Shown in pieces: positions 27,652 through 36,588 of a DNA stretch of 64,000 bases. Numbering within the stretch: the stretch's first letter is position 1; each line of letters opens with the position of its first letter. Under the pieces are notes generated by a model. That model was not told the DNA's origin and made no database searches. It worked only from the letters and a program-made list of their open reading frames with translations. Origin of the DNA: Klebsormidium nitens. Its lineage: Eukaryota; Plantae; Klebsormidiophyceae. Both the position numbers and the translations under genes were made by a program. The stretch spans positions 26,203-90,202 of the forward strand of contig DF237325.1 in the NCBI GenBank assembly GCA_000708835.1, in the 5' to 3' direction.

Positions 27652-27681
27652 CATTACTGCACATTACTGCACATTACTGCA
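27652..27681. repeat. Tandem 10-mer (CATTACTGCA)x3
   Basis: cattactgca cattactgca cattactgca, about 230 bp upstream of the ATG at 27912. Confidence 0.9.
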
Positions 27682-27911
27682 CCCTGTACATTTGCTGAGC
27701 TGGCTTCACTGGTGCTTGATGTTCCCGGCGCTTGCCTTAACCATTGTGAACAGATTGTAGAGTGCCCTCAGAAGGACTCAAGGACTCAATGAAAGCAGCG
27801 CGCAGCAGGGTCAACTGCCGGACTCTGTCCTGTACAATGCTTTACACGTCGAAGGACCCCTCTTTCCTCATTCCTGAACCTTGAGGAGTCATTGCGGAGT
27901 TCCTACCAGCA

Positions 27912-30900
27912 ATGGCGTTTCTTCTTGGAAGGTGTGGTTCATTCAAGCAAGGGACTGCAGCTGTCAAAGGCGAAGAAAAGCTCACAGCCACGCCAGCGAG
28001 TGGGAGGGCGCCTGAATTCACTGCCGGAATCTCGATTGCACCCTCGGCACTGGACTCATTACAAACGGTTGACTCAACAGGGCCAGTGCCGCAGTGGCTG
28101 ATCAAGTTCAATGCATTTGCTGAGGTTGCTGAAGACAAAGCTGAAAAGCTGCAGGCAATCACCGCGATGGTGCCTCCCAACCTGATTGAAAAGTTGGACC
28201 TCATTCCTGCTGTTGGGAACGTCGTCGAGAATCTGCTTGGGAGCGCCTGGGAGATAGGCCAGTCTCTGCCCTGGGCTGGCGTCATCTTCAAGGTGATGGA
28301 CAGCATACACAAGGGGGTGAAGGAAGTGCGCCTCAACAAAGCCAATTTTGCCAAGCTGCAATCCGTCATTGCGCAGATCCGCGACGTTCTGAAGGAGCCA
28401 GAGATGAGCAAGAGCCTCCAGGGGCTGCCACAGAGCGCTGACTCAGCGCTGCAGAGCTTGGTGCAGTCCCTGGTCGATGCACACGCGTTCATGGTGAAGT
28501 TCCAGGGGCAGGGCACCATCATGTACTTCCTCAGTTTGAGCGGGGGCACGCAGCGCTTTCAAGACCTGAGTGATGGGATCAAGGAAGCTTACGAGGCTCT
28601 GCGTGCCATGCTGGACCTTCACACGCACACGCTGCTGAAGGTGAGACCAGTGACCCCAACCCCTTTTTAGCCCGAGCCTCATCTTGGGCCAGGTGCTCAG
28701 ATTCGTGAACTCTCGGTTCTGCACTGAGTAAGGCCATAGTTGGTCAGATTCACTTCCCCTGCTCAGACGGACATAAGTCCAAACCCAAAATTGAACGCTC
28801 CGCACCATTATTTATCCTAGGCCCCTAAACCAACCCCACCCGTCCACCAGGCAAATGACCTGAGTCCACGAAGCCATAATCCACAGCAATACAATGCATG
28901 GAACCAACTTGGATAGGGCGTTTTGTACCACTTGCTAGTTAGCCTGGGCTTCTTCAATAGAGTTCACTAATTTGCTAGTCAGAAATCTCGTATAATCCTG
29001 CACTGAAGAGTTTTTAATGTTGTGATTGCCTTTGAGCTGAGCAAAAGTTGTGCAACAATGCTCAGCCACAAGATCTGTTGCCAAAGGGGCCACCTTGAAA
29101 GTCGAGAAGTCCACCACCAAGCCTCAGCATAAGCGTGAGCTCTTTTTGCCGAGACATAGGATTTTAAGAGAGAGCTCCTTATCTTTTGAGAGCAAGCACT
29201 TGGACAGACATTCCTGACCCATTGCAAGCAAAAGTTGCCAGCAACAATGCTTCATGTACAAAAGTCTCCAATTAGAAATTAGTATTAGAGCCCTTCTTAT
29301 CTGCTTTGAAGACATCAAGATAGCGAAATTGCAATCGAATTCCTCATCCTTGTTGACTCCCCATTAACCGCTTGCTTACCCAATTTCTTGCCTACTTGAG
29401 GTTTCACCTCACGGAAGCCACAAGCAGGAAGCTACATTGCCTCTCCTTTCAGGGTCTTCTTGATTCTCACAAACAAGTAGAAGGTCCTGATTTGTCTCCT
29501 CTCTCACAGAACCTGCACGTGCCAGACTACAAGGAGGACCTGGAAGAGATCAAGGCACTACAGCGGCAGCTGCTTGATGACTTCCACAGCGCGTGGGGCA
29601 TGGCCAAGCTGCGCTTCGAGCTGTCAGCCACGTGTCAGCTTGTATTGCAGCAGGGGGACATCAGCATGTGGTTCCTCGACAGGTGAGCTCCCCCGAGTGT
29701 GAGCTCGTGCCGCAGCAAGTGATGTCAGCACGTACGCAGTGGCCATCTGTTATTTCGTGCTGCAGCCCAGTGAACCAAGGCCCCAAGACTGTCCTATCCA
29801 ATACCGTGATTGACTACCACGTGTCAGCTTGTGCCAAGCGGAGGACTTCAGCCTGTGGTTCCCCTGCAGGGACACGGACGCAATCGTGAATCCCACAAAC
29901 CAGGCCATGAAACCCGGAGGTGTCGCATGCAACGGAGTAATTCATGCTGGTGCAGGAAAGGAGCTCTGGAGGTAGGCAGCTCCTCACCGCTGTCCGAAAG
30001 CTAGTTGGGAACGTTTTGAGAGTAAGTTCTTCGTGAAGGAATATGCTTTTTGAAATCAACAATAGTCCCACTTTTGACTTGTCCTGAGGGCTCAGAGATA
30101 CTTTTCATGAAGCTGGTACAAACAGAGCGGGATAAACAGCATGGTACCAGGCGTTTTCGCGAGCACAGCTGTGCATAATGTACTCAGCCAGAAGAGAAAT
30201 GTTTAAGGAAGGTTCTTGTCAATTGCCAACATCATCTGATGTCAAACCCGCAGCAGTTGGGTTCATGTAAAGATAAGTTGTAGTTCGGTTGTTTTGCAGG
30301 TACATTGAAAACAACATCCCAGTCCGCAAAGAGCACATGTTACGATACGAGTGCTGCGACGTCGAGGCACGTTCCGAGCAGCCCGCGCCAGTGAAAGCGC
30401 CCTGCCCCAGCTGTGACAAAGTCGCGGAAAGGCGGGGGAAGCTGCAAGAGGTCCGACTGGGATTTCTGCAGGCGTGCACAACCGAGGGGTTTGGCCTCTT
30501 TGCGAGGCGCATCGTGCACACAGTGGGAAATGCCTTCAACGGCATGCGGCGGGACGAGGCGGTCTCACGGATGCGGACTGTGTACGAAAATTGTCTCAAG
30601 GAGGCAAACAAAGGAGGTAAGATTCTGTTCCCTCTCGAGACGCTTTCTATGAGATGTCGAAAACTAGAGTCGCGCGTACCCGGGGGCAAACGGTTAAGTC
30701 GATTGCCCGCATGCAGTGCACGCACCAGCTTGTACACTTCATTGTGAAAAGTTTAAGCGCCCTTCCTTAAGCGAAGCTTTCAAGTGCATTCTTCTGGGTA
30801 AGCGCGCTGCTCTAAGCCAATTCTTGGAACAGGAGGGGCAGCTTACAACCAGAAGATGCTCTCTAGTTCCTGGTATTGGTACCCGAAAGGGAGTTGCACC

Positions 30901-31270
30901 ATCGTAACAACGACAACGACGCATGTGTGCAGGTTTGATTCGCTACCTCGCGTTCCCCGCGCTTTCTTGCGGCACAATTGGACTGCCCCCAAAATACGCC
31001 GCGGAGGTAGCCATTGAAGCATGCAAGAAGGAAGCGGGCAATCTCAAAGAAATCCACTTTGTGCTGCAAGACAAGCGGGCATGGGTCGCTTGGAGCACCG
31101 TCGCTGCTAACTACAAGCCAGGAACCGATTCCGGGGACGCATTCGGAGGCGCCATTCAGGTGAACAACTTTGGTAACCTCGCTACTAACCACAAGCCAGG
31201 AACTCATTCCACGGACGTCGACCCATTCGAAGGCACCATTCATGCGAAAAAATTTGACAACCTCCCCTAG
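27912..31270 (+). CDS. MLKL-NTD/RPW8/MCAfunc-like helical domain fused to a MacroD-type macrodomain (about 552 aa); exons 27912-28640, 29510-29682, 29870-29971, 30300-30616, 30933-31270
   Basis: Exon 1: SLPWAGVIFKVMDSIHKGVKEVRLNKANFAKLQSVIAQI...ALQSLVQSLVDAHAFMVKF...RFQDLSDGIKEAYEAL (four-helix executor-like pattern). Exons 2-5: RFELSATCQLVLQQGDISMW / DAIVNPTN...GVIHAGAG / GFGLFARRIVHTVG...VYENCLKEA / RYLAFPALSCG...EIHFVLQD (macrodomain motifs). GT-AG introns with phases 0, 2, 2, 1; 1659 nt in total, open frame. Confidence 0.85.
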
Positions 31271-33138
31271 GCTGCCGAGCAGATGGAGGTCCGCAAGATG
31301 CGGCGGCTGGTCACGAGACGTCCGTCAAATACGGCCTGCCCCATTCCTGCATGACTAGCTACTAGTGTGTCTTTTGGAGCAGAGCTCGGTTGTGGAGAGA
31401 GTTGTCGTGGGTACCCTTCTGACGTTTCTGTCCAGAAGAGTCGACAGGAGGAAATGACATCTTATTGAGAATCATTATTAACGCGTTCCATGTTAGAACA
31501 TCGACAACTACGCACACAGAACCAGTCTATGAAAGGTCGGAGGCAGAACTCTTTCGATTGTACTCGATCGATCCTTTGTATACTTGTTTTTCGTCGCTTA
31601 TATCCAGAGCCGTGCGTGTACGCGGCCCAATGAATGACATCCATTCTGCTTCGATAAAACCCTATCGAAGTATTAATACCTGAGTTTAAATTTGAGCGCT
31701 TACACTCAGCACATTTGTCTTCCTGAACCGCATCTGCGCTGGCTAAATGACGCGGCTCCCCTATGACTATGTGGATATACGAAGTCTTAGAGATGCATGA
31801 TCAACTGGCAAGTGTTGACTAATTACTTTTTTGTCAGACGGCCGCGCGCAGCCTGCATATTGGATGAGAACTGGTTGTATTGAATTTCTTGATTTTTATC
31901 TAGTGCTTGACAAGTGGGCAAGCTGTCGGGTCAAAGCGCATCCTATTCCTGGGGATCGCCGTGTACGTCATCATTGCATTGCGCACATACCGTACCGGCC
32001 TATTTGTGTAAGCCATCTAGCTTTTTCAATGTTACATTTAGACGTCCATCAAACAATTTGAATGCATGCCAGGAGCTAGCCTGCCGGCCTTGGTCACTGA
32101 GGCGCACCGATAAAATAAGCGAGTCATGCCCGCGCGCCACTATGAACCAACGGATTCATGCAAACGCTGTTTTGGCAAGGTGCAGCGATGCGCGGCCGTC
32201 GAATTTATTCTCAATGAAGATGCACATGGCGATGCCCATCTGGGTGGAGTCCACACTGAGGCTCAACCAGCCAGTAAGTGGTTTAAATTTTTTTTAGAAA
32301 CTGTCAAGAAATCTCCAATGCAACGGTGAGAATCCGACTGGAGCCCAGATGAGTCTTTACCCCTTTCATCAAATTTGAGAATATCTGTCACGCTTCGCCC
32401 ACAAGTTAACGATGATGTGTATTCATGAGTATGATCATGGCAACGGCATGCGCCGCTTCTTGGCGTCTTGATCTATCATTGCTCTTCTCGACCGCACCGT
32501 TGGGACGCTGCCTGGCGTTGACTTCTCAGTGAATGGAGTGTGTTTACTTGCTTCCCTGGGATCAGTGCGGCGATCAATTCCTCTTCTTAAGTACAGCGGT
32601 TTTATCAGATATGACTGCTGAATAGCACGAACTTATGAGCCGATGTTGGGAAATCCTTCTCAATTATGACCAAATGATCCATGATTGGCTACGCCGATAG
32701 CTGCCAGGCTGGCGCACGGGTCGCAGAGCGGGCAAGCTATGCTTTGTCAAGGGAGTGGGTATACTGTGACTCTACTGGTATACTCATGGTGAAAATCAAG
32801 TTTGATTTTGTTTCTTGCATGAATCTTGATGCTAAGTCCGACCACTTCAATCAGGTTCTCTGCTTCAGGTGACGAACGGAGGGCCGACAACGGGACTCTA
32901 TAGGTACAGCAGGGTAGTCGAGCAATTGAGGAGAAAGGGAGATTTGTCAGGCAGTTGATCAACCTTCAAAACGCATGATACGTTTGAGCAGTGTCGAAAT
33001 ATAGAGGATCAGAGCGACTAGCGACCTGACCAGCCGCTCGACTTTGCAGAACATGCTAAACCGGGTACTTTCAGAAGGGGTCGCAGTTCACTAAGTCTTG
33101 AGACCTTCAGATTGAAAAGCGGCGCACGCGCATCCGCG

Positions 33139-34623
33139 ATGGCGAAAGAAGGAAGCGAGAGGAAGCAAGCAGAAGCAACTACTGGTTCTGGCGGCGGACA
33201 GGGAGGCAGCTTCTTCAATGATGCGTCCAGCAGCGACGTTGTGGTCAGGATTGTTGAAGGCAGCGAAGACGGAGCAATAGCGGAGCAGGGTGGGTTCTTA
33301 GAGCTGCACCTTCACCGGAGTATCCTGATTGAGAACAGCACCTTCTTTTCTGCACAGCTGTCAGATAGGTGGGAGGGTGCATGCGCTCGAGACACTCAGG
33401 GGCGCCCGCTTCTGCTCATCGCGTACTCTGGGCACTCTCAGGACTGTGCTTCTGCGCTGCAGAAGGTTTCTGAAAGGGCTCCCGGTGATCCAACCAAATT
33501 CCCGGTGCATTCGTTTGCTGGGTTCGAAGAGGCGCTCGACTGTCTAAAGCCTGCCGACCAGTTGTCTCTATTCTCCGTTTCTGCATCTGCTGTGGCGTAC
33601 TTGGAGAGCATTCCCTGATCCGGAGAGCAAAGGGAGCAGATCCTGACAAAGGTCGCGCAAGTCGGGTTCCCTTCGAAAGAGCTTCTAGCAAGATTGAAGC
33701 CGCCATCTGAATGGATTAGCACTGGGCTTCTAGATCCTGTCCTCTCAAAAGCAACGTCGATGCAGGCTCCCGACGCAAACGCACGCTCTTCTCTCCGAGA
33801 CTTTATGTCGGAGGTAAACGTGTCACTAGGCACCCACGACGAGACTGCGATGGAGACAGAGGGCTTTTTGGCGGCCGGCCTGCGAAGATGCCTTTCTCAG
33901 ATGGACAGCACCACAATCCCTTCTCTCAAGTTTGAAGCGGAATTCAAACACCACCGCTACCAGCCTAGACCGCAGTCGACCTGTAATACTCCCTTGTCCA
34001 ATCTGCTGAGCAACTTATCCTGGATTTTCCAGCTTCCAAGCTTGTGCGGGGCGAATGACGTTAGGAGGGACGTCGTGAAGACGATGCTTCAGGTTCATGC
34101 GGCTTGCAAAGCTGCAGTCTTTAAGGAGCAGATCTTTCACCGTTACATAGCGGAGCGCCTTTACCTCCCCGTCATGAAGGCTGTCGCGGAAGGAAGCCTG
34201 GTCCTGGGAGCGGAGAGGCGTGTCAGTCTGCTGGGAATGTGGGTCCCGAGACGTTTTGCTTACTACGATACGGAAGGGGCTCAGCATGTTCACTCCGAGG
34301 CGATGCAAGCAGCCTTCAACGCGGTGCTGGGAAGTGTGAGCTTCGACGACCAGGAAGAAATTCTGCGTGGGTGGATGGACGAACTCAAGGGAGAGAACCC
34401 CTGGGAGCCGTGGTTTGGAGAGTGGATGAAGATGTGCCTCCTCGCAAGGTGGAAAAAGGGTAGCGCCCGTAAGCATTCCGGTCAAATTTCTTTTCGCTTC
34501 CGACCGTCCTGTTTGTGGCCCCAATGCTCATGCTCCTCTGATTGGTTATACTTCAGTTCTTTCATCGTATGTGATGGGCAGAGCAGCAAGGTGTGGTATC
34601 AGGGGCTTGAAAGCTTGCCGTAA
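33139..34623 (+). pseudogene. Intronless BTB/POZ-domain gene (At3g50780/At1g63850-like family) interrupted by an in-frame TGA at 33616-33618
   Basis: FFNDASSSDVVVRIV...LELHLHRSILIENSTFFSAQLSDRW (BTB pattern). ORFs 33112-33618 and 33694-34623 share a frame and are separated only by YLESIP*SGEQREQI, where this family has YLEAVPW (recalled). The 3' end is uncertain. Confidence 0.7.
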
Positions 34624-36588
34624 AAAGGCTGTGAACGATCGCTTACTATCAGTCAAAGCTTTGGCTGGCCACGGTTTGTGGCACTAGGTCCAGCATCTTA
34701 TGATAAAAGATCCACTGAGTTCCTTCCATTTCGGAGCTGGCCTTAGTATACTTCTAAAGCACTTCCGAGATTTGAAGGCTGATTGCAGTCACTCGCGGCA
34801 GGCGCTTCTTTATCTGGAATGAAGCTATTCTAGTCTTAGAGCCTGTGAGGTCATTCTCCATTTATGAAGCGTTTCAGTAGGACCTTCACGTCTGAGAACC
34901 GAACCTGATTGACGAAGAGCTGCGGGTCTGACTATCCATGTCCTGGAGACAGTAGGATGATAGCTAGCAAGTTTTCGAGCCGCATGCAAGCAATCTGTCT
35001 CTCGGTTCGATAATGAACCGTCCGCTGCGCCCAGCTGCGCCTGAGCAGGAACAAAGAGTGTCTCTTGCACTTACGTCAGCTCTTCATTCCTGATCGTGGC
35101 AGGTACGGATTGCAGAAGCTATCTGGGGACTGAGCCCAAGATCTCCTCAGCGCAGCATGGCTAGCACTTGTACATATAGTAATTTTGAGTGGTCACAGAG
35201 CTACAAGTTCGCCTTTCTTTGGGTCTGCTTTTGCAGATTGAACACGTGAATACTGTAAGTTGGGCGAAGACTTCACAGATAGATACCCAGTCAGGAACGC
35301 GAATTTGTCAACGGTCCCCTCTTGTAGGACATGTGAAGAAGGGAATATAAGGAGACAAAAGGTTTCATATTAAGGCATGTCGTCTCTGCTACTAGCATCC
35401 AGCATAAGGCTAAAAAGCTGACGTTACGATTCGAAGACGTTCCAAACCTCTCAGAGAGAACGCGAAACAAGTTGACCTTCGACCTATGCATCAAAAACAC
35501 AATTCCCTGCTGTGGCACTGAGCTGCCTATGGATCTAGCTGGAAGGCACACCTTCTCAAATTGCCAGGCGCAGCATTTGTACAAGCCGCGAATTCCAAAA
35601 TTGACGGTTTCGTATCCCAAGAAGATACGGGCCCCCTCAGGCCACCAACCTAAACCGGTCCAATCATATTCGTTGATCTCCGGCCTATGAGATTGTCTTG
35701 TTGGGGTATACCCGCTCGGTCCCTCAGTGACAAAAGCAATGCAGCGCGCGTGCCAAGTTGGGCGACTATATACATGTTGTGCATGCGTCCACCCACTGGG
35801 CCATGTGGGCCATAAGCGAAGCTCTCCGACTTGTTTGAGCTTATATGTACGTCCATACGCTCAGTGCCTAGAGGTGCATGCCACCGGCCCGCCAACTTAT
35901 AAGCTGCACTACTTATGCTTTAATGGTGCCATAAGGAACGCACGGGGAAGATGCGCTTTGTGCCGTGGAAAATACGTGTGCGATTTGTGACCCTGAAGCT
36001 TGCCTATATCATGCACGATACCCATTGTAAGGCCGCCATGGTTTCACAGGAACCTTCCTCCAATAAGTGGATCATGGGTATAAAGTAACGGACCTTTGAT
36101 ACATGCCAAACCGAGTGCTGCGCAAAAGGAGATTCACTGCATATGACCATTCCGACAATCAAGAGTTGCTCTTTTCCGGATAAACAGCTCTTCACACGAA
36201 CCCCAATGCCATGGTGAATTATCATCATGTACGTACGGCTGCAGCATTTGGGTACCGTTATGTGACTTGTTTACCGAGCCATACGTGGTTGCGACCACAT
36301 CTGCACATCTGACCGCAGCTCAACGATAAGTTGTTGCAACAGCTAGACAGTTGCTTGCGGGACTGTTCAGACATTCGAACTTAGCTTGTCAAAGTATGGT
36401 GTTACGATCAGCAAGTTCGTCGAAAGCTGTCAAAATTTTGCAGAACCATTGCCGGCCACACAGCAATAGTGGGCTACTTCAAGTTGACGTGTCTACTTTA
36501 CCTGGCCTTCATTTCCGCGTCACTTTGTACACATGACTGCTCAAAGCATAAGCAGCGACTCTGTAGCACCGCCAGTGACGCCTTTAGC

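What the first reader, a model, noticed from the sequence alone, without database searches (positions are those of the whole stretch)
27912..31270. MLKL/RPW8-like executor domain fused to an ADP-ribose macrodomain: candidate ADPR-gated cell-death/immune effector
Seen: one phase-consistent 5-exon frame joins an N-terminal amphipathic helical domain (PWAGVIFKVMDSI..VKEVRLNKANF..L...L..LV..L.DA..F..KF...RF..L...I) to a complete macrodomain (GDI, DAIVNPTN, IH.GAG, IVHTVG, AFPALSCG, EIHFVL). Established: MLKL-NTD, RPW8 and MCAfunc four-helix bundles are membrane-permeabilising executors, normally gated by a pseudokinase or NB-ARC domain. Macrodomains bind ADP-ribose, plant TIR domains generate ADPR-derived signals, and the macrodomain of bacterial type II Thoeris ThsA gates a membrane effector. 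Inference: this protein could be a eukaryotic analogue in which ADP-ribose, a TIR product or ADP-ribosylated proteins trigger the executor. I do not recall this architecture being described.
Basis: partly seen in the sequence, partly recalled or inferred. Interest (0 to 1): 0.9.

Follow-up and report, generated by a model that had tools for sequence, protein, structure and literature searches.

The report
MLKL-like helical bundle fused to macrodomain
The streptophyte alga Klebsormidium nitens makes one messenger RNA that joins a helical bundle, of the kind that breaches membranes in animal, fungal and plant cell death, to an ADP-ribose-recognising macrodomain; I found no description of this pairing, so it is a testable candidate for a signal-triggered death or defence switch, but its function is untested.

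Summary
Window 27912-31270 (+) is a five-exon gene of Klebsormidium nitens (KFL_003760080, 552 aa). RNA contigs from three independent studies each cross all four GT..AG joints at the predicted positions.

- **N-terminal domain:** residues 124-245 match Pfam MLKL_N above its curated cut-off. Language-model and predicted-structure neighbours are MLKL_N, MCAfunc, RPW8 and DUF7792 bundles.
- **Macrodomain:** a helix in the position of the MLKL brace (about 250-281) leads into a complete MacroD-type macrodomain (283-497). The ADP-ribose-contacting motifs are kept. The MacroD catalytic Asp is Asn, and the loop-2 Ile-Tyr is Thr-Ile.
- **What is absent:** there is no kinase, NB-ARC or transmembrane segment.
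- **Relatives:** exhaustive and word-based protein searches and two metagenome scans found only the protein itself. No paper in the library describes the architecture.

The functional reading, an ADP-ribose-type ligand releasing a membrane executor, fits the layout and has a verified bacterial analogue in the TM-macro ThsA of Thoeris. Nothing here tests it. The bundle fold itself could not be modelled with confidence.

I class it as a new variant of a known kind, in a single species. The scan had already flagged this same stretch in an overlapping window. It also holds unchecked notes on other bundle fusions in this genome.

The parts
27700..27911 (+). 5' UTR; transcript contigs run beyond 27700
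   Evidence: RNA contigs X1 and X5 cover it continuously with exon 1. 27912 is the first start codon after an in-frame stop.
27912..28640 (+). Exon 1, residues 1-243: N-terminal extension with little predicted structure (1-60) and short helices (61-95), amphipathic pre-helix, and the four-helix-bundle-like domain
   Evidence: phmmer finds only P0001, at 100% identity.
28200..28259 (+). Residues 97-116: amphipathic helix rich in small residues, with no Lys or Arg, just upstream of the Pfam match
   Evidence: Predicted as a helix in both AF2 runs. Hydrophobic moment 1.81 and mean hydropathy 0.91, below transmembrane level.
28281..28640 (+). Residues 124-243: match to Pfam MLKL_N (PF22215), profile positions 3-123 of 142; the match ends two residues into exon 2
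   Evidence: E = 7.7e-7, 29.2 bits against a cut-off of 27; 28.7 bits on the whole protein. Atlas neighbours are MLKL_N, MCAfunc and RPW8.
28641..29509 (+). Intron 1 (GT..AG, 869 nt)
   Evidence: Joint present in contigs of X1, X5 and X8.
29510..29682 (+). Exon 2, residues 244-301: helix in the position of the MLKL brace (about 250-281), then the first macrodomain strand with GDI (D293)
   Evidence: Helix predicted. Aligns to the start of MacroD2 and PARP14 macrodomains.
29683..29869 (+). Intron 2 (187 nt), a degenerate tandem copy of exon 2 plus the tail of intron 1
   Evidence: Joint. Global alignment score 129 against 81 +/- 7.3 for shuffles; the 3' 55 nt are about 85% identical.
29870..29971 (+). 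Exon 3, residues 301-335: macrodomain loop 1 (DAIVNPTN, GGVACNG, IHAGAG)
29972..30299 (+). Intron 3 (GT..AG, 328 nt)
30300..30616 (+). Exon 4, residues 335-441: insert of about 45 aa carrying four Cys (CC at 353-354, CxxC at 370-373), then the macrodomain core with IVHTVG
   Evidence: Pfam Macro match on this exon alone, E = 3.7e-5. Sequence. The insert is unmatched in the PDB alignments.
30617..30932 (+). Intron 4 (GT..AG, 316 nt)
30933..31102 (+). Exon 5, first part, residues 441-497: macrodomain loop 2 (FPALSCGTIGLP) and last strand (EIHFVL)
31103..31270 (+). Exon 5, C-terminal tail: two pseudo-repeats (residues 498-523 and 524-552) and the TAG stop
   Evidence: The repeats are 47% identical over 30 aa, pairwise E = 5e-8.
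31271..31683 (+). 3' UTR
   Evidence: RNA contigs end at 31594 to 31683.

Best explanation
This is an expressed, lineage-specific sensor-executor fusion. A cytosolic protein carries an MLKL_N/HeLo-type helical bundle, preceded by an amphipathic helix with no basic residues and followed by a brace-like helix. That bundle is held in check by a C-terminal MacroD-derived macrodomain. The proposed mechanism is inferred, not shown. The macrodomain pocket binds an ADP-ribose-containing ligand, either a free ADP-ribose-type nucleotide from a TIR or other NADase, or an ADP-ribosylated protein. Binding causes oligomerisation or releases the brace. The bundle then engages a membrane, causing ion flux, cell death or stress signalling. 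What is shown: the transcript, the two domain assignments, the retained ligand-contact motifs, and the absence of a kinase, NB-ARC or transmembrane segment. What is inferred: ligand identity, autoinhibition, membrane activity and any immune role.
For: One mRNA joins both domains. The protein has a Pfam MLKL_N match above the gathering score. Language-model neighbours are MLKL_N, MCAfunc and RPW8 clusters, with a top score of 0.94 and 203 of 256 shared features. For residues 60-270, 7 of the 10 best hits that carry a family share a family or clan with the best of them. ESM-model structural neighbours of residues about 113-250 are plant MCAfunc-kinases and DUF7792 proteins at TM 0.48-0.53. The predicted helix order is long, long, long, short, long, then a brace-like helix; from my own knowledge this matches the MLKL N-terminal layout. 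The macrodomain scores 54.5 bits in Pfam, with MacroD, PARP14 and macroH2A hits in the PDB and MacroD/YmdB-type NCBIfam hits. It keeps D293, N311, GGV 317-319 and H326, while MacroD2's D102 is N322 and its I189/Y190 are T455/I456. That pattern is compatible with a binder rather than an efficient hydrolase. A ligand-bound macrodomain that drives a membrane effector exists in bacteria as the Thoeris TM-macro ThsA. K. nitens is reported to have TIR-bearing NLR-like proteins, and none of the four TIR groups shared among land-plant lineages, one of which co-occurs with EDS1, includes a K. nitens sequence.
Against: There is no functional data of any kind. The bundle fold is not confidently modelled: AF2 gave pLDDT 36 and 44, and Foldseek on that model was uninformative. 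The Pfam score exceeds the threshold by only about 2 bits. The same bundle family in streptophytes is fused to Arm, U-box, PLAC8 and kinase domains whose roles are not cell death. No orthologue or paralogue was found, so nothing shows selection for the fusion. Some macrodomains that lack the MacroD Asp are still hydrolases (my own knowledge), so the sensor reading is not secure. The neighbouring genes are unrelated to immunity.
Confidence: 0.35

Rival explanations
1. It is a membrane- or scaffold-targeted ADP-ribosyl hydrolase. The macrodomain is the working part, removing mono-ADP-ribose from proteins or processing O-acetyl-ADP-ribose or signalling nucleotides. The helical bundle only localises or oligomerises it.
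For: The best family matches are MacroD/YmdB-type hydrolases. N311 and H326 are kept. The nearest structural cluster is the plant stand-alone macro protein, TM 0.76 normalised by the hit. The gene is expressed in RNA libraries of several independent studies, which shows no sign of tight repression; this is weak evidence.
Against: The MacroD catalytic Asp is Asn322, and the loop-2 aromatic residue that positions the distal ribose is Ile456. All NCBIfam scores are far below the equivalog cut-offs, 78 bits against 200. The rival also does not explain why this particular bundle, with its brace-like linker, is attached.
Confidence: 0.3
2. It is a reader of protein ADP-ribosylation with a non-lytic helical adaptor. 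The bundle acts as a protein-interaction or phosphoinositide-binding module, as presumed for the Arm and U-box proteins that carry DUF7792 or MCAfunc. It links ADP-ribosylated targets to other machinery without permeabilising membranes.
For: Structural neighbours include DUF7792-Arm proteins. Streptophyte MCAfunc domains are mostly partnered with U-box and Arm domains, and K. nitens has two such proteins. The bundle region is mildly basic, pI 9.0. Unchecked scan notes list many PARP- and WWE-type genes in this genome.
Against: The best profile match is MLKL_N itself, not MCAfunc or DUF7792. The amphipathic pre-helix and brace-like helix are features of the executor-type proteins.
Confidence: 0.2
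3. The N-terminal half is a generic helical or coiled-coil region that is not homologous to MLKL, HeLo or RPW8 bundles. The Pfam match is a borderline compositional hit, and the gene is a recent domain shuffle of little functional consequence.
For: phmmer of the N-terminal domain finds no relative among 1.84 billion representatives and nothing related in the PDB. AF2 could not fold it. The Pfam score is only about 2 bits above the cut-off. TM scores to bundle proteins are about 0.5, from a low-confidence ESM model with pLDDT 0.59.
Against: Three partly independent methods point to the same superfamily: profile HMM, language-model features, and predicted-structure search. These bundle families are well known to be undetectable by pairwise sequence search. 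The gene is well expressed and cleanly spliced.
Confidence: 0.15

Closest known systems
Vertebrate MLKL and plant MLKLs (four-helix bundle, brace, then pseudokinase or kinase-like domain)
   Same: An N-terminal MLKL_N-type bundle (Pfam PF22215 match) is followed by a linker helix and then a globular C-terminal regulatory domain. The predicted helix order resembles the MLKL N-terminal region.
   Different: There is no kinase or pseudokinase domain; a macrodomain stands in its place. An N-terminal extension of about 120 residues includes an extra amphipathic helix. No pairwise sequence similarity is detectable.
Type II Thoeris ThsA (TM-macro effector activated by His-ADPR, ADPR or IAD)
   Same: The logic is the same: a C-terminal macrodomain that binds a TIR-made ADP-ribose derivative is coupled to an N-terminal membrane-acting part, with activation by ligand-induced oligomerisation.
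   Different: The protein is eukaryotic and its gene has introns. The N-terminal part is a soluble helical bundle, not transmembrane helices; the highest hydropathy window is 1.19. No PADLOC model matches. The macrodomain is nearer to MacroD, PARP14 and macroH2A than to ThsA. No cognate TIR gene lies next to it.
RPW8/CC-R domains of the helper NLRs ADR1 and NRG1, and RPW8 proteins
   Same: RPW8 clusters are among the language-model neighbours. From my own knowledge, in seed plants these bundles act downstream of TIR-made ADP-ribose derivatives.
   Different: There is no NB-ARC or LRR domain. In seed plants the nucleotide is read by EDS1 heterodimers, not by a macrodomain on the executor itself.
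Fungal HeLo, HeLo-like and basidiomycete MLKL-like proteins (HET-S, HELLP)
   Same: The top language-model neighbours are small fungal MLKL_N proteins. There is an extra N-terminal helix, as described for basidiomycete MLKL-like and Goodbye domains. A C-terminal tail with two pseudo-repeats recalls the layout of HET-S.
   Different: The tail repeats do not fit the HET-s-related motif, because the invariant Gly at position 19 is absent from the second repeat and the repeat period is 26-29 rather than 21 residues. A macrodomain lies between the bundle and the tail, and no adjacent NLR gene is present.
MacroD-type macrodomains (human MacroD1/2, E. coli YmdB, Af1521, plant stand-alone macro proteins)
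   Same: The fold and all ADP-ribose-contact motifs are shared.
   Different: The catalytic Asp is Asn322 and the loop-2 Ile-Tyr is Thr455-Ile456. There is an insert of about 45 aa with four Cys and a long N-terminal fusion.

Membership tests
Pfam MLKL_N (PF22215) / HeLo-type four-helix-bundle superfamily | Profile match at or above the curated gathering score | tested here: met
   29.2 bits on exon 1 and 28.7 bits on the whole protein, against a cut-off of 27. E is about 1e-6, covering residues 124-245 and profile positions 3-123 of 142.
Pfam MLKL_N (PF22215) / HeLo-type four-helix-bundle superfamily | Four-helix-bundle fold | tested here: inconclusive
   AF2 without an alignment gave pLDDT 36 and 44, and Foldseek on that model had no hit below E = 0.4. 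The Atlas ESM model, with overall pLDDT 0.59, has MCAfunc-kinase and DUF7792 neighbours at TM 0.48-0.53 over 120-137 residues.
Pfam MLKL_N (PF22215) / HeLo-type four-helix-bundle superfamily | Membrane permeabilisation or cell-death activity of the isolated domain | not testable with these tools
   This needs expression, liposome or ion-flux assays.
MLKL proper (animal or plant) | C-terminal protein-kinase-like domain after the brace | tested here: not met
   Pfam finds no kinase family even at E up to 10; only Macro, MLKL_N and a weak DUF6630 match appear.
Macro domain (PF01661), MacroD-like | Profile match and macro fold | tested here: met
   Pfam 54.5 bits against a cut-off of 22. PDB hits to PARP14, MacroD2, Af1521 and macroH2A. 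The Atlas structural match covers residues 270-504 at TM 0.76, normalised by the hit.
Macro domain (PF01661), MacroD-like | ADP-ribose-contacting motifs: the Asp of GDI, the second Asn of the NxxN motif, the Gly-rich loop 1, and the SxGxxGxP loop 2 | tested here: met
   D293, N311, G317-G318-V319 and S452-x-G454-x-x-G457-x-P459 are present in the alignments and sequence.
Macro domain (PF01661), MacroD-like | MacroD catalytic set: Asp equivalent to MacroD2 D102, and a loop-2 aromatic equivalent to Y190 | tested here: not met
   The Asp position is N322, and the G-I-Y positions are G454-T455-I456. H326, equivalent to H106, is kept. NCBIfam equivalog cut-offs are not reached, 78 bits against 200.
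Thoeris type II ThsA (TM-macro) | N-terminal transmembrane helices | tested here: not met
   The highest 19-residue Kyte-Doolittle window is 1.19, and it lies inside the macrodomain.
Thoeris type II ThsA (TM-macro) | Match to defence-system profiles, and a cognate TIR gene alongside | tested here: not met
   PADLOC gives 0 families. The neighbours are adh_short, an orphan 241-aa gene and HAT1. Gene adjacency is not expected in a eukaryote.
RPW8 / CC-R helper NLR | NB-ARC domain following the bundle | tested here: not met
   There is no NB-ARC match.
HET-S-type HeLo protein with a C-terminal HET-s-related amyloid motif | Two 21-residue repeats with an invariant Gly at position 19 and hydrophobic residues at positions 5, 8, 10, 16 and 18 | tested here: not met
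   The two tail repeats are real (47% identity) but are 26 and 29 residues long. The only Gly that can be put in register (G521) is Asp549 in repeat 2. The rule is taken, and I checked it by eye on the sequence.

The most novel reading that the evidence does not exclude
In a streptophyte alga in which none of the four TIR groups shared among land-plant lineages was found, this single protein may do what seed plants do with a TIR, an EDS1 heterodimer and an RPW8-type helper NLR. Its macrodomain would directly read a TIR- or PARP-made ADP-ribose signal and release an MLKL-type bundle onto a membrane. That would make it a eukaryotic counterpart of the bacterial TM-macro ThsA, and a possible early form of nucleotide-gated cell death in the plant lineage.
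Probability: 0.22. Interest if true: 0.85.

Novelty: new variant of a known kind. Interest (0 to 1): 0.63.

Why it matters
Helical-bundle executors (MLKL, HeLo, RPW8 and CC domains) are shared by animal, fungal and plant cell death. They are known to be released by a pseudokinase, an amyloid motif or an NB-ARC switch. A macrodomain in that regulatory position would be a fourth kind of trigger, and it would tie the executor directly to ADP-ribose chemistry.

That bears on two open questions. The first is how TIR or NADase products are decoded in plant-lineage organisms without EDS1. The second is whether the bacterial Thoeris logic, a macrodomain sensor coupled to a membrane effector, has a eukaryotic counterpart.

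The protein is small, soluble by prediction and expressed. Ligand binding, hydrolase activity and N-terminal toxicity can therefore be tested with ordinary assays. If the bundle turns out to be only a localisation module, the gene is just a lineage-specific oddity.

Tried and rejected
1. **Homologue collection failed.** It was needed to test conservation of the fusion and to feed AlphaFold. All of these returned only the protein itself or nothing:
   - phmmer of exon 1 against 1.84 billion representatives;
   - three word-indexed searches, on the whole protein, on residues 270-500, and on residues 95-262 at E up to 10;
   - two metagenome scans;
   - tblastn of the protein against the window, which found no paralogue.
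2. **AlphaFold2 without an alignment failed.** The whole protein gave pLDDT 35.7 and residues 92-282 gave 43.9. Foldseek on the second model against the PDB and Swiss-Prot models gave nothing below E = 0.4. The MLKL executioner domain appeared only at rank 19, E = 1.5. I treat this as uninformative, not as evidence against the fold.
3. **phmmer of the N-terminal part against PDB sequences** gave only chance-level helical hits.
4. **Homology to the ThsA macrodomain is rejected.** There was no PADLOC hit, and ThsA was not among the PDB hits.
5. **The amyloid-motif idea is rejected.** I considered whether the two C-terminal pseudo-repeats are a HET-s- or RHIM-type amyloid signalling motif. The period is wrong and the invariant Gly is missing from repeat 2.
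6. **Genomic neighbours gave no hint.** I looked for a partner such as a TIR, NLR or PARP gene and found only adh_short, an orphan gene, HAT1 and a SET-like ORF.
7. **A second organism label could not be followed up.** 'Organism B' held 12-17% of the locus words but is not listed as a holder of exon 1.
Full report
**Observation**

Reading the sequence gives a phase-consistent five-exon model on the + strand:

| Exon | Window coordinates |
|---|---|
| 1 | 27912-28640 |
| 2 | 29510-29682 |
| 3 | 29870-29971 |
| 4 | 30300-30616 |
| 5 | 30933-31270 |

The model is 1659 nt and encodes 552 residues. I laid assembled RNA contigs of four runs from four studies on 27700-31700. Single contigs of 2411 nt (X1), 2393 nt (X5) and 1753 nt (X8) cross all four introns. 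Each intron is GT..AG, each joint is at the predicted base, and there are no mismatches. X1 and X5 also cover the start codon. The fourth run, at lower depth, shows three of the four joints. Intron depth is zero. Exon 1 alone is held at a word share of 1.00 in RNA runs of four studies and 0.91 in a fifth, and in the DNA runs that probably gave the assembly.

The exhaustive protein search returned one hit, P0001. It is 552 aa, letter for letter my model. The sources name it 'hypothetical protein KFL_003760080 [Klebsormidium nitens]' and 'Macro domain-containing protein'. It lies on the 90-kb scaffold DF237325.1.

**The C-terminal half**

Pfam Macro matches the whole protein at 54.5 bits, against a cut-off of 22. 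NCBIfam's MacroD/YmdB-type models match at up to 78 bits, E = 5e-22, but far below their equivalog cut-offs. PDB sequence hits are PARP14 macrodomains, MacroD2, bacterial MacroD, Af1521 and macroH2A1.1. The ESM Atlas model of this protein superposes over residues 270-504 on a streptophyte stand-alone macro protein, at TM 0.76 normalised by the hit.

The HMMER alignments to MacroD2 and to Oceanobacillus MacroD, with residue positions, show two things.

- **Ligand contacts are kept:** D293 (the Asp of GDI, which contacts adenine in Af1521), N311 (MacroD2 N92), G317-G318-V319, H326 (H106), and the S452-x-G-x-x-G-x-P459 phosphate loop. The roles of these residues are from my own knowledge.
- **Two MacroD catalytic features are changed:** D102 is N322, and I189-Y190 are T455-I456.

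This favours a pocket that still binds ADP-ribose but is a weaker or different hydrolase. It does not prove that, because from my own knowledge some macrodomains without this Asp are active hydrolases.

Between the IHAGAG motif and the core strand there is an insert of about 45 residues. It has four Cys, CC at 353-354 and CxxC at 370-373, and it has no counterpart in the PDB alignments.

**The N-terminal half**

Exon 1 alone matches Pfam MLKL_N (PF22215) at E = 7.7e-7 and 29.2 bits, against a cut-off of 27. The match covers residues 124-239 and profile positions 3-117. On the whole protein it scores 28.7 bits over residues 124-245.

Two further methods agree with this.

- **Language-model features.** For exon 1, the best cluster that carries a family is an MLKL_N cluster, with a score of 0.94 and 203 of 256 shared features. 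Further sets are MCAfunc, RPW8, DUF7792 and Goodbye. For residues 60-270, 7 of the 10 best hits that carry a family share a family or clan with the best of them.
- **Predicted structure.** The Atlas's own model of residues about 113-250 has plant MCAfunc-kinase proteins and DUF7792-Arm proteins as nearest neighbours, at TM 0.48-0.53 over 120-137 residues.

Other results are negative or uninformative.

- Pairwise searches see nothing. phmmer against 1.84 billion representatives found only the protein itself, and the PDB gave only chance-level helical hits.
- AlphaFold2 without an alignment failed, with pLDDT 35.7 and 43.9. Foldseek on that model is therefore meaningless.
- Secondary structure is consistent between the two AF2 runs: helices at 97-116, 120-137, 143-169, 174-196, a short one at 203-209, 212-244, and then 250-281. 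This is the order expected for an MLKL-type bundle with a short top helix and a brace, preceded by one extra helix. That reading is my own inference.
- The extra helix (97-116) is strongly amphipathic, rich in small residues and has no Lys or Arg. No window reaches transmembrane hydropathy.
- An extra N-terminal helix is described for basidiomycete MLKL-like and Goodbye domains.

I put homology to the MLKL_N/HeLo/RPW8/MCAfunc superfamily at about 0.75-0.85.

**Architecture**

From N to C terminus the protein has:

1. a segment of about 60 residues with little predicted secondary structure in the low-confidence AF2 model;
2. short helices;
3. the amphipathic pre-helix;
4. the bundle;
5. a brace-like helix, encoded by exon 2;
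6. the macrodomain, which starts in the same exon 2;
7. a 55-residue tail made of two pseudo-repeats, 47% identical.

There is no kinase, NB-ARC, TIR or transmembrane element.

**Is it found elsewhere?**

No relative with or without this architecture was recovered by any search. The Atlas has no cluster of 50 or more members that combines MLKL_N and Macro among the neighbours listed. The window has no paralogue.

Full-text searches found no paper that mentions the locus tag, and none among the listed results describes this domain pair. A study of MCAfunc partners lists only two K. nitens proteins, both of its combination type I, and the word 'macro' does not occur in its text. The domain pair is, however, visible in precomputed Pfam annotation. 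It is therefore undescribed rather than undetected.

**How it most likely works**

The layout copies that of MLKL, bundle then brace then globular regulator, with a ligand-binding macrodomain in the regulator's place. The nearest working precedent for 'macrodomain binds an ADP-ribose derivative, then a membrane effector fires' is bacterial. In the Thoeris TM-macro ThsA, His-ADPR, ADPR or IAD binding makes the macrodomains oligomerise and cluster the transmembrane parts.

K. nitens is reported to carry NLR-like proteins with TIR or CC/RPW8-like bundles. None of the four TIR groups shared among land-plant lineages, including the conserved TIR-only group that co-occurs with EDS1 in flowering plants, includes a K. 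nitens sequence. A direct reader of such nucleotides would therefore make biological sense.

I commit to the ligand-released executor model at about 0.35. The rivals are:

| Rival | Confidence |
|---|---|
| Bundle-targeted ADP-ribosyl hydrolase | 0.30 |
| Non-lytic reader or adaptor | 0.20 |
| N-terminal half is not a true bundle homologue | 0.15 |

All steps beyond domain identity are inference.

**Membership**

- It meets Pfam's criterion for MLKL_N.
- It is not an MLKL, because it has no kinase-like domain.
- It is not an RPW8-type NLR, because it has no NB-ARC domain.
- It is not a ThsA. It has no transmembrane helix and no PADLOC match, and its macrodomain is of another subtype.
- It is not a HET-S-type protein, because the tail repeats fail the HET-s-related motif rule.
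- It is a divergent MacroD-like macrodomain that fails the MacroD catalytic test.

**Context**

The neighbours are a short-chain dehydrogenase gene upstream, an orphan 241-aa gene downstream, and a HAT1-type acetyltransferase. They give no functional hint.

The scan's earlier notes include this same stretch read in an overlapping window, and notes on the altered macrodomain residues. They also list other putative bundle fusions (Sel1, NB-ARC-TPR, pseudokinase) and many PARP/WWE genes in this genome. Apart from my own stretch, I did not check any of these.

**Verdict**

This is a new variant of a known kind. It is interesting mainly because it gives a compact, directly testable candidate link between ADP-ribose signalling and an MLKL-type executor in the plant lineage. 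Two things temper that: it is a single-species orphan, and the bundle fold was not confidently modelled.

Noticed in passing
window 29683-29869 (intron 2), compared with 29494-29682: Intron 2 (187 nt) aligns along most of its length with the last 16 nt or so of intron 1 plus exon 2. The score is 129 against 81 +/- 7.3 for shuffles, and the 3' 55 nt are about 85% identical, including the ...CAG|G junction. This is the pattern expected if the intron arose by tandem duplication of an exonic segment, with the first copy supplying the donor and the second the acceptor.
   Followed up: partly
window 31103-31267 (residues 498-552): The C-terminal tail consists of two pseudo-repeats of 26 and 29 residues, 47% identical, with a shared N-x-K-P-G-T ... 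F-x-G-x-I ... F-x-N-L pattern. The layout recalls the double repeat at the end of HET-S, but the repeats do not fit the HET-s-related motif rule. Their function is unknown.
   Followed up: partly
window 30304-30465 (residues 337-390): The macrodomain carries an insert of about 45 residues with four Cys arranged CC-x15-CxxC. It is absent from the aligned PDB macrodomains. It could be a small metal-binding or redox-sensitive loop near the ligand pocket.
   Followed up: no
window 28200-28259 (residues 97-116): An amphipathic helix rich in small residues, with no basic residues, sits just before the Pfam MLKL_N match. It resembles the extra N-terminal helix reported for basidiomycete MLKL-like and Goodbye domains.
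   Followed up: partly
window 27652-27682 and 27772-27789: The 5' UTR contains perfect short tandem repeats: CATTACTGCA three times and AAGGACTC twice.
   Followed up: no
window 33805-35164 (L001 15894-17253): The downstream gene is called as a 241-aa protein with no Pfam family on record. Its long first ORF has no Pfam or PDB match. It is an orphan.
   Followed up: partly
exon 1, window 27912-28640: A plant-associated metatranscriptome run (X32) holds 14% of the exon-1 words, so this alga or a very close relative is transcriptionally present in an environmental sample. 'Organism B', which held 12-17% of the words of the whole locus, is not listed as a holder of exon 1.
   Followed up: no
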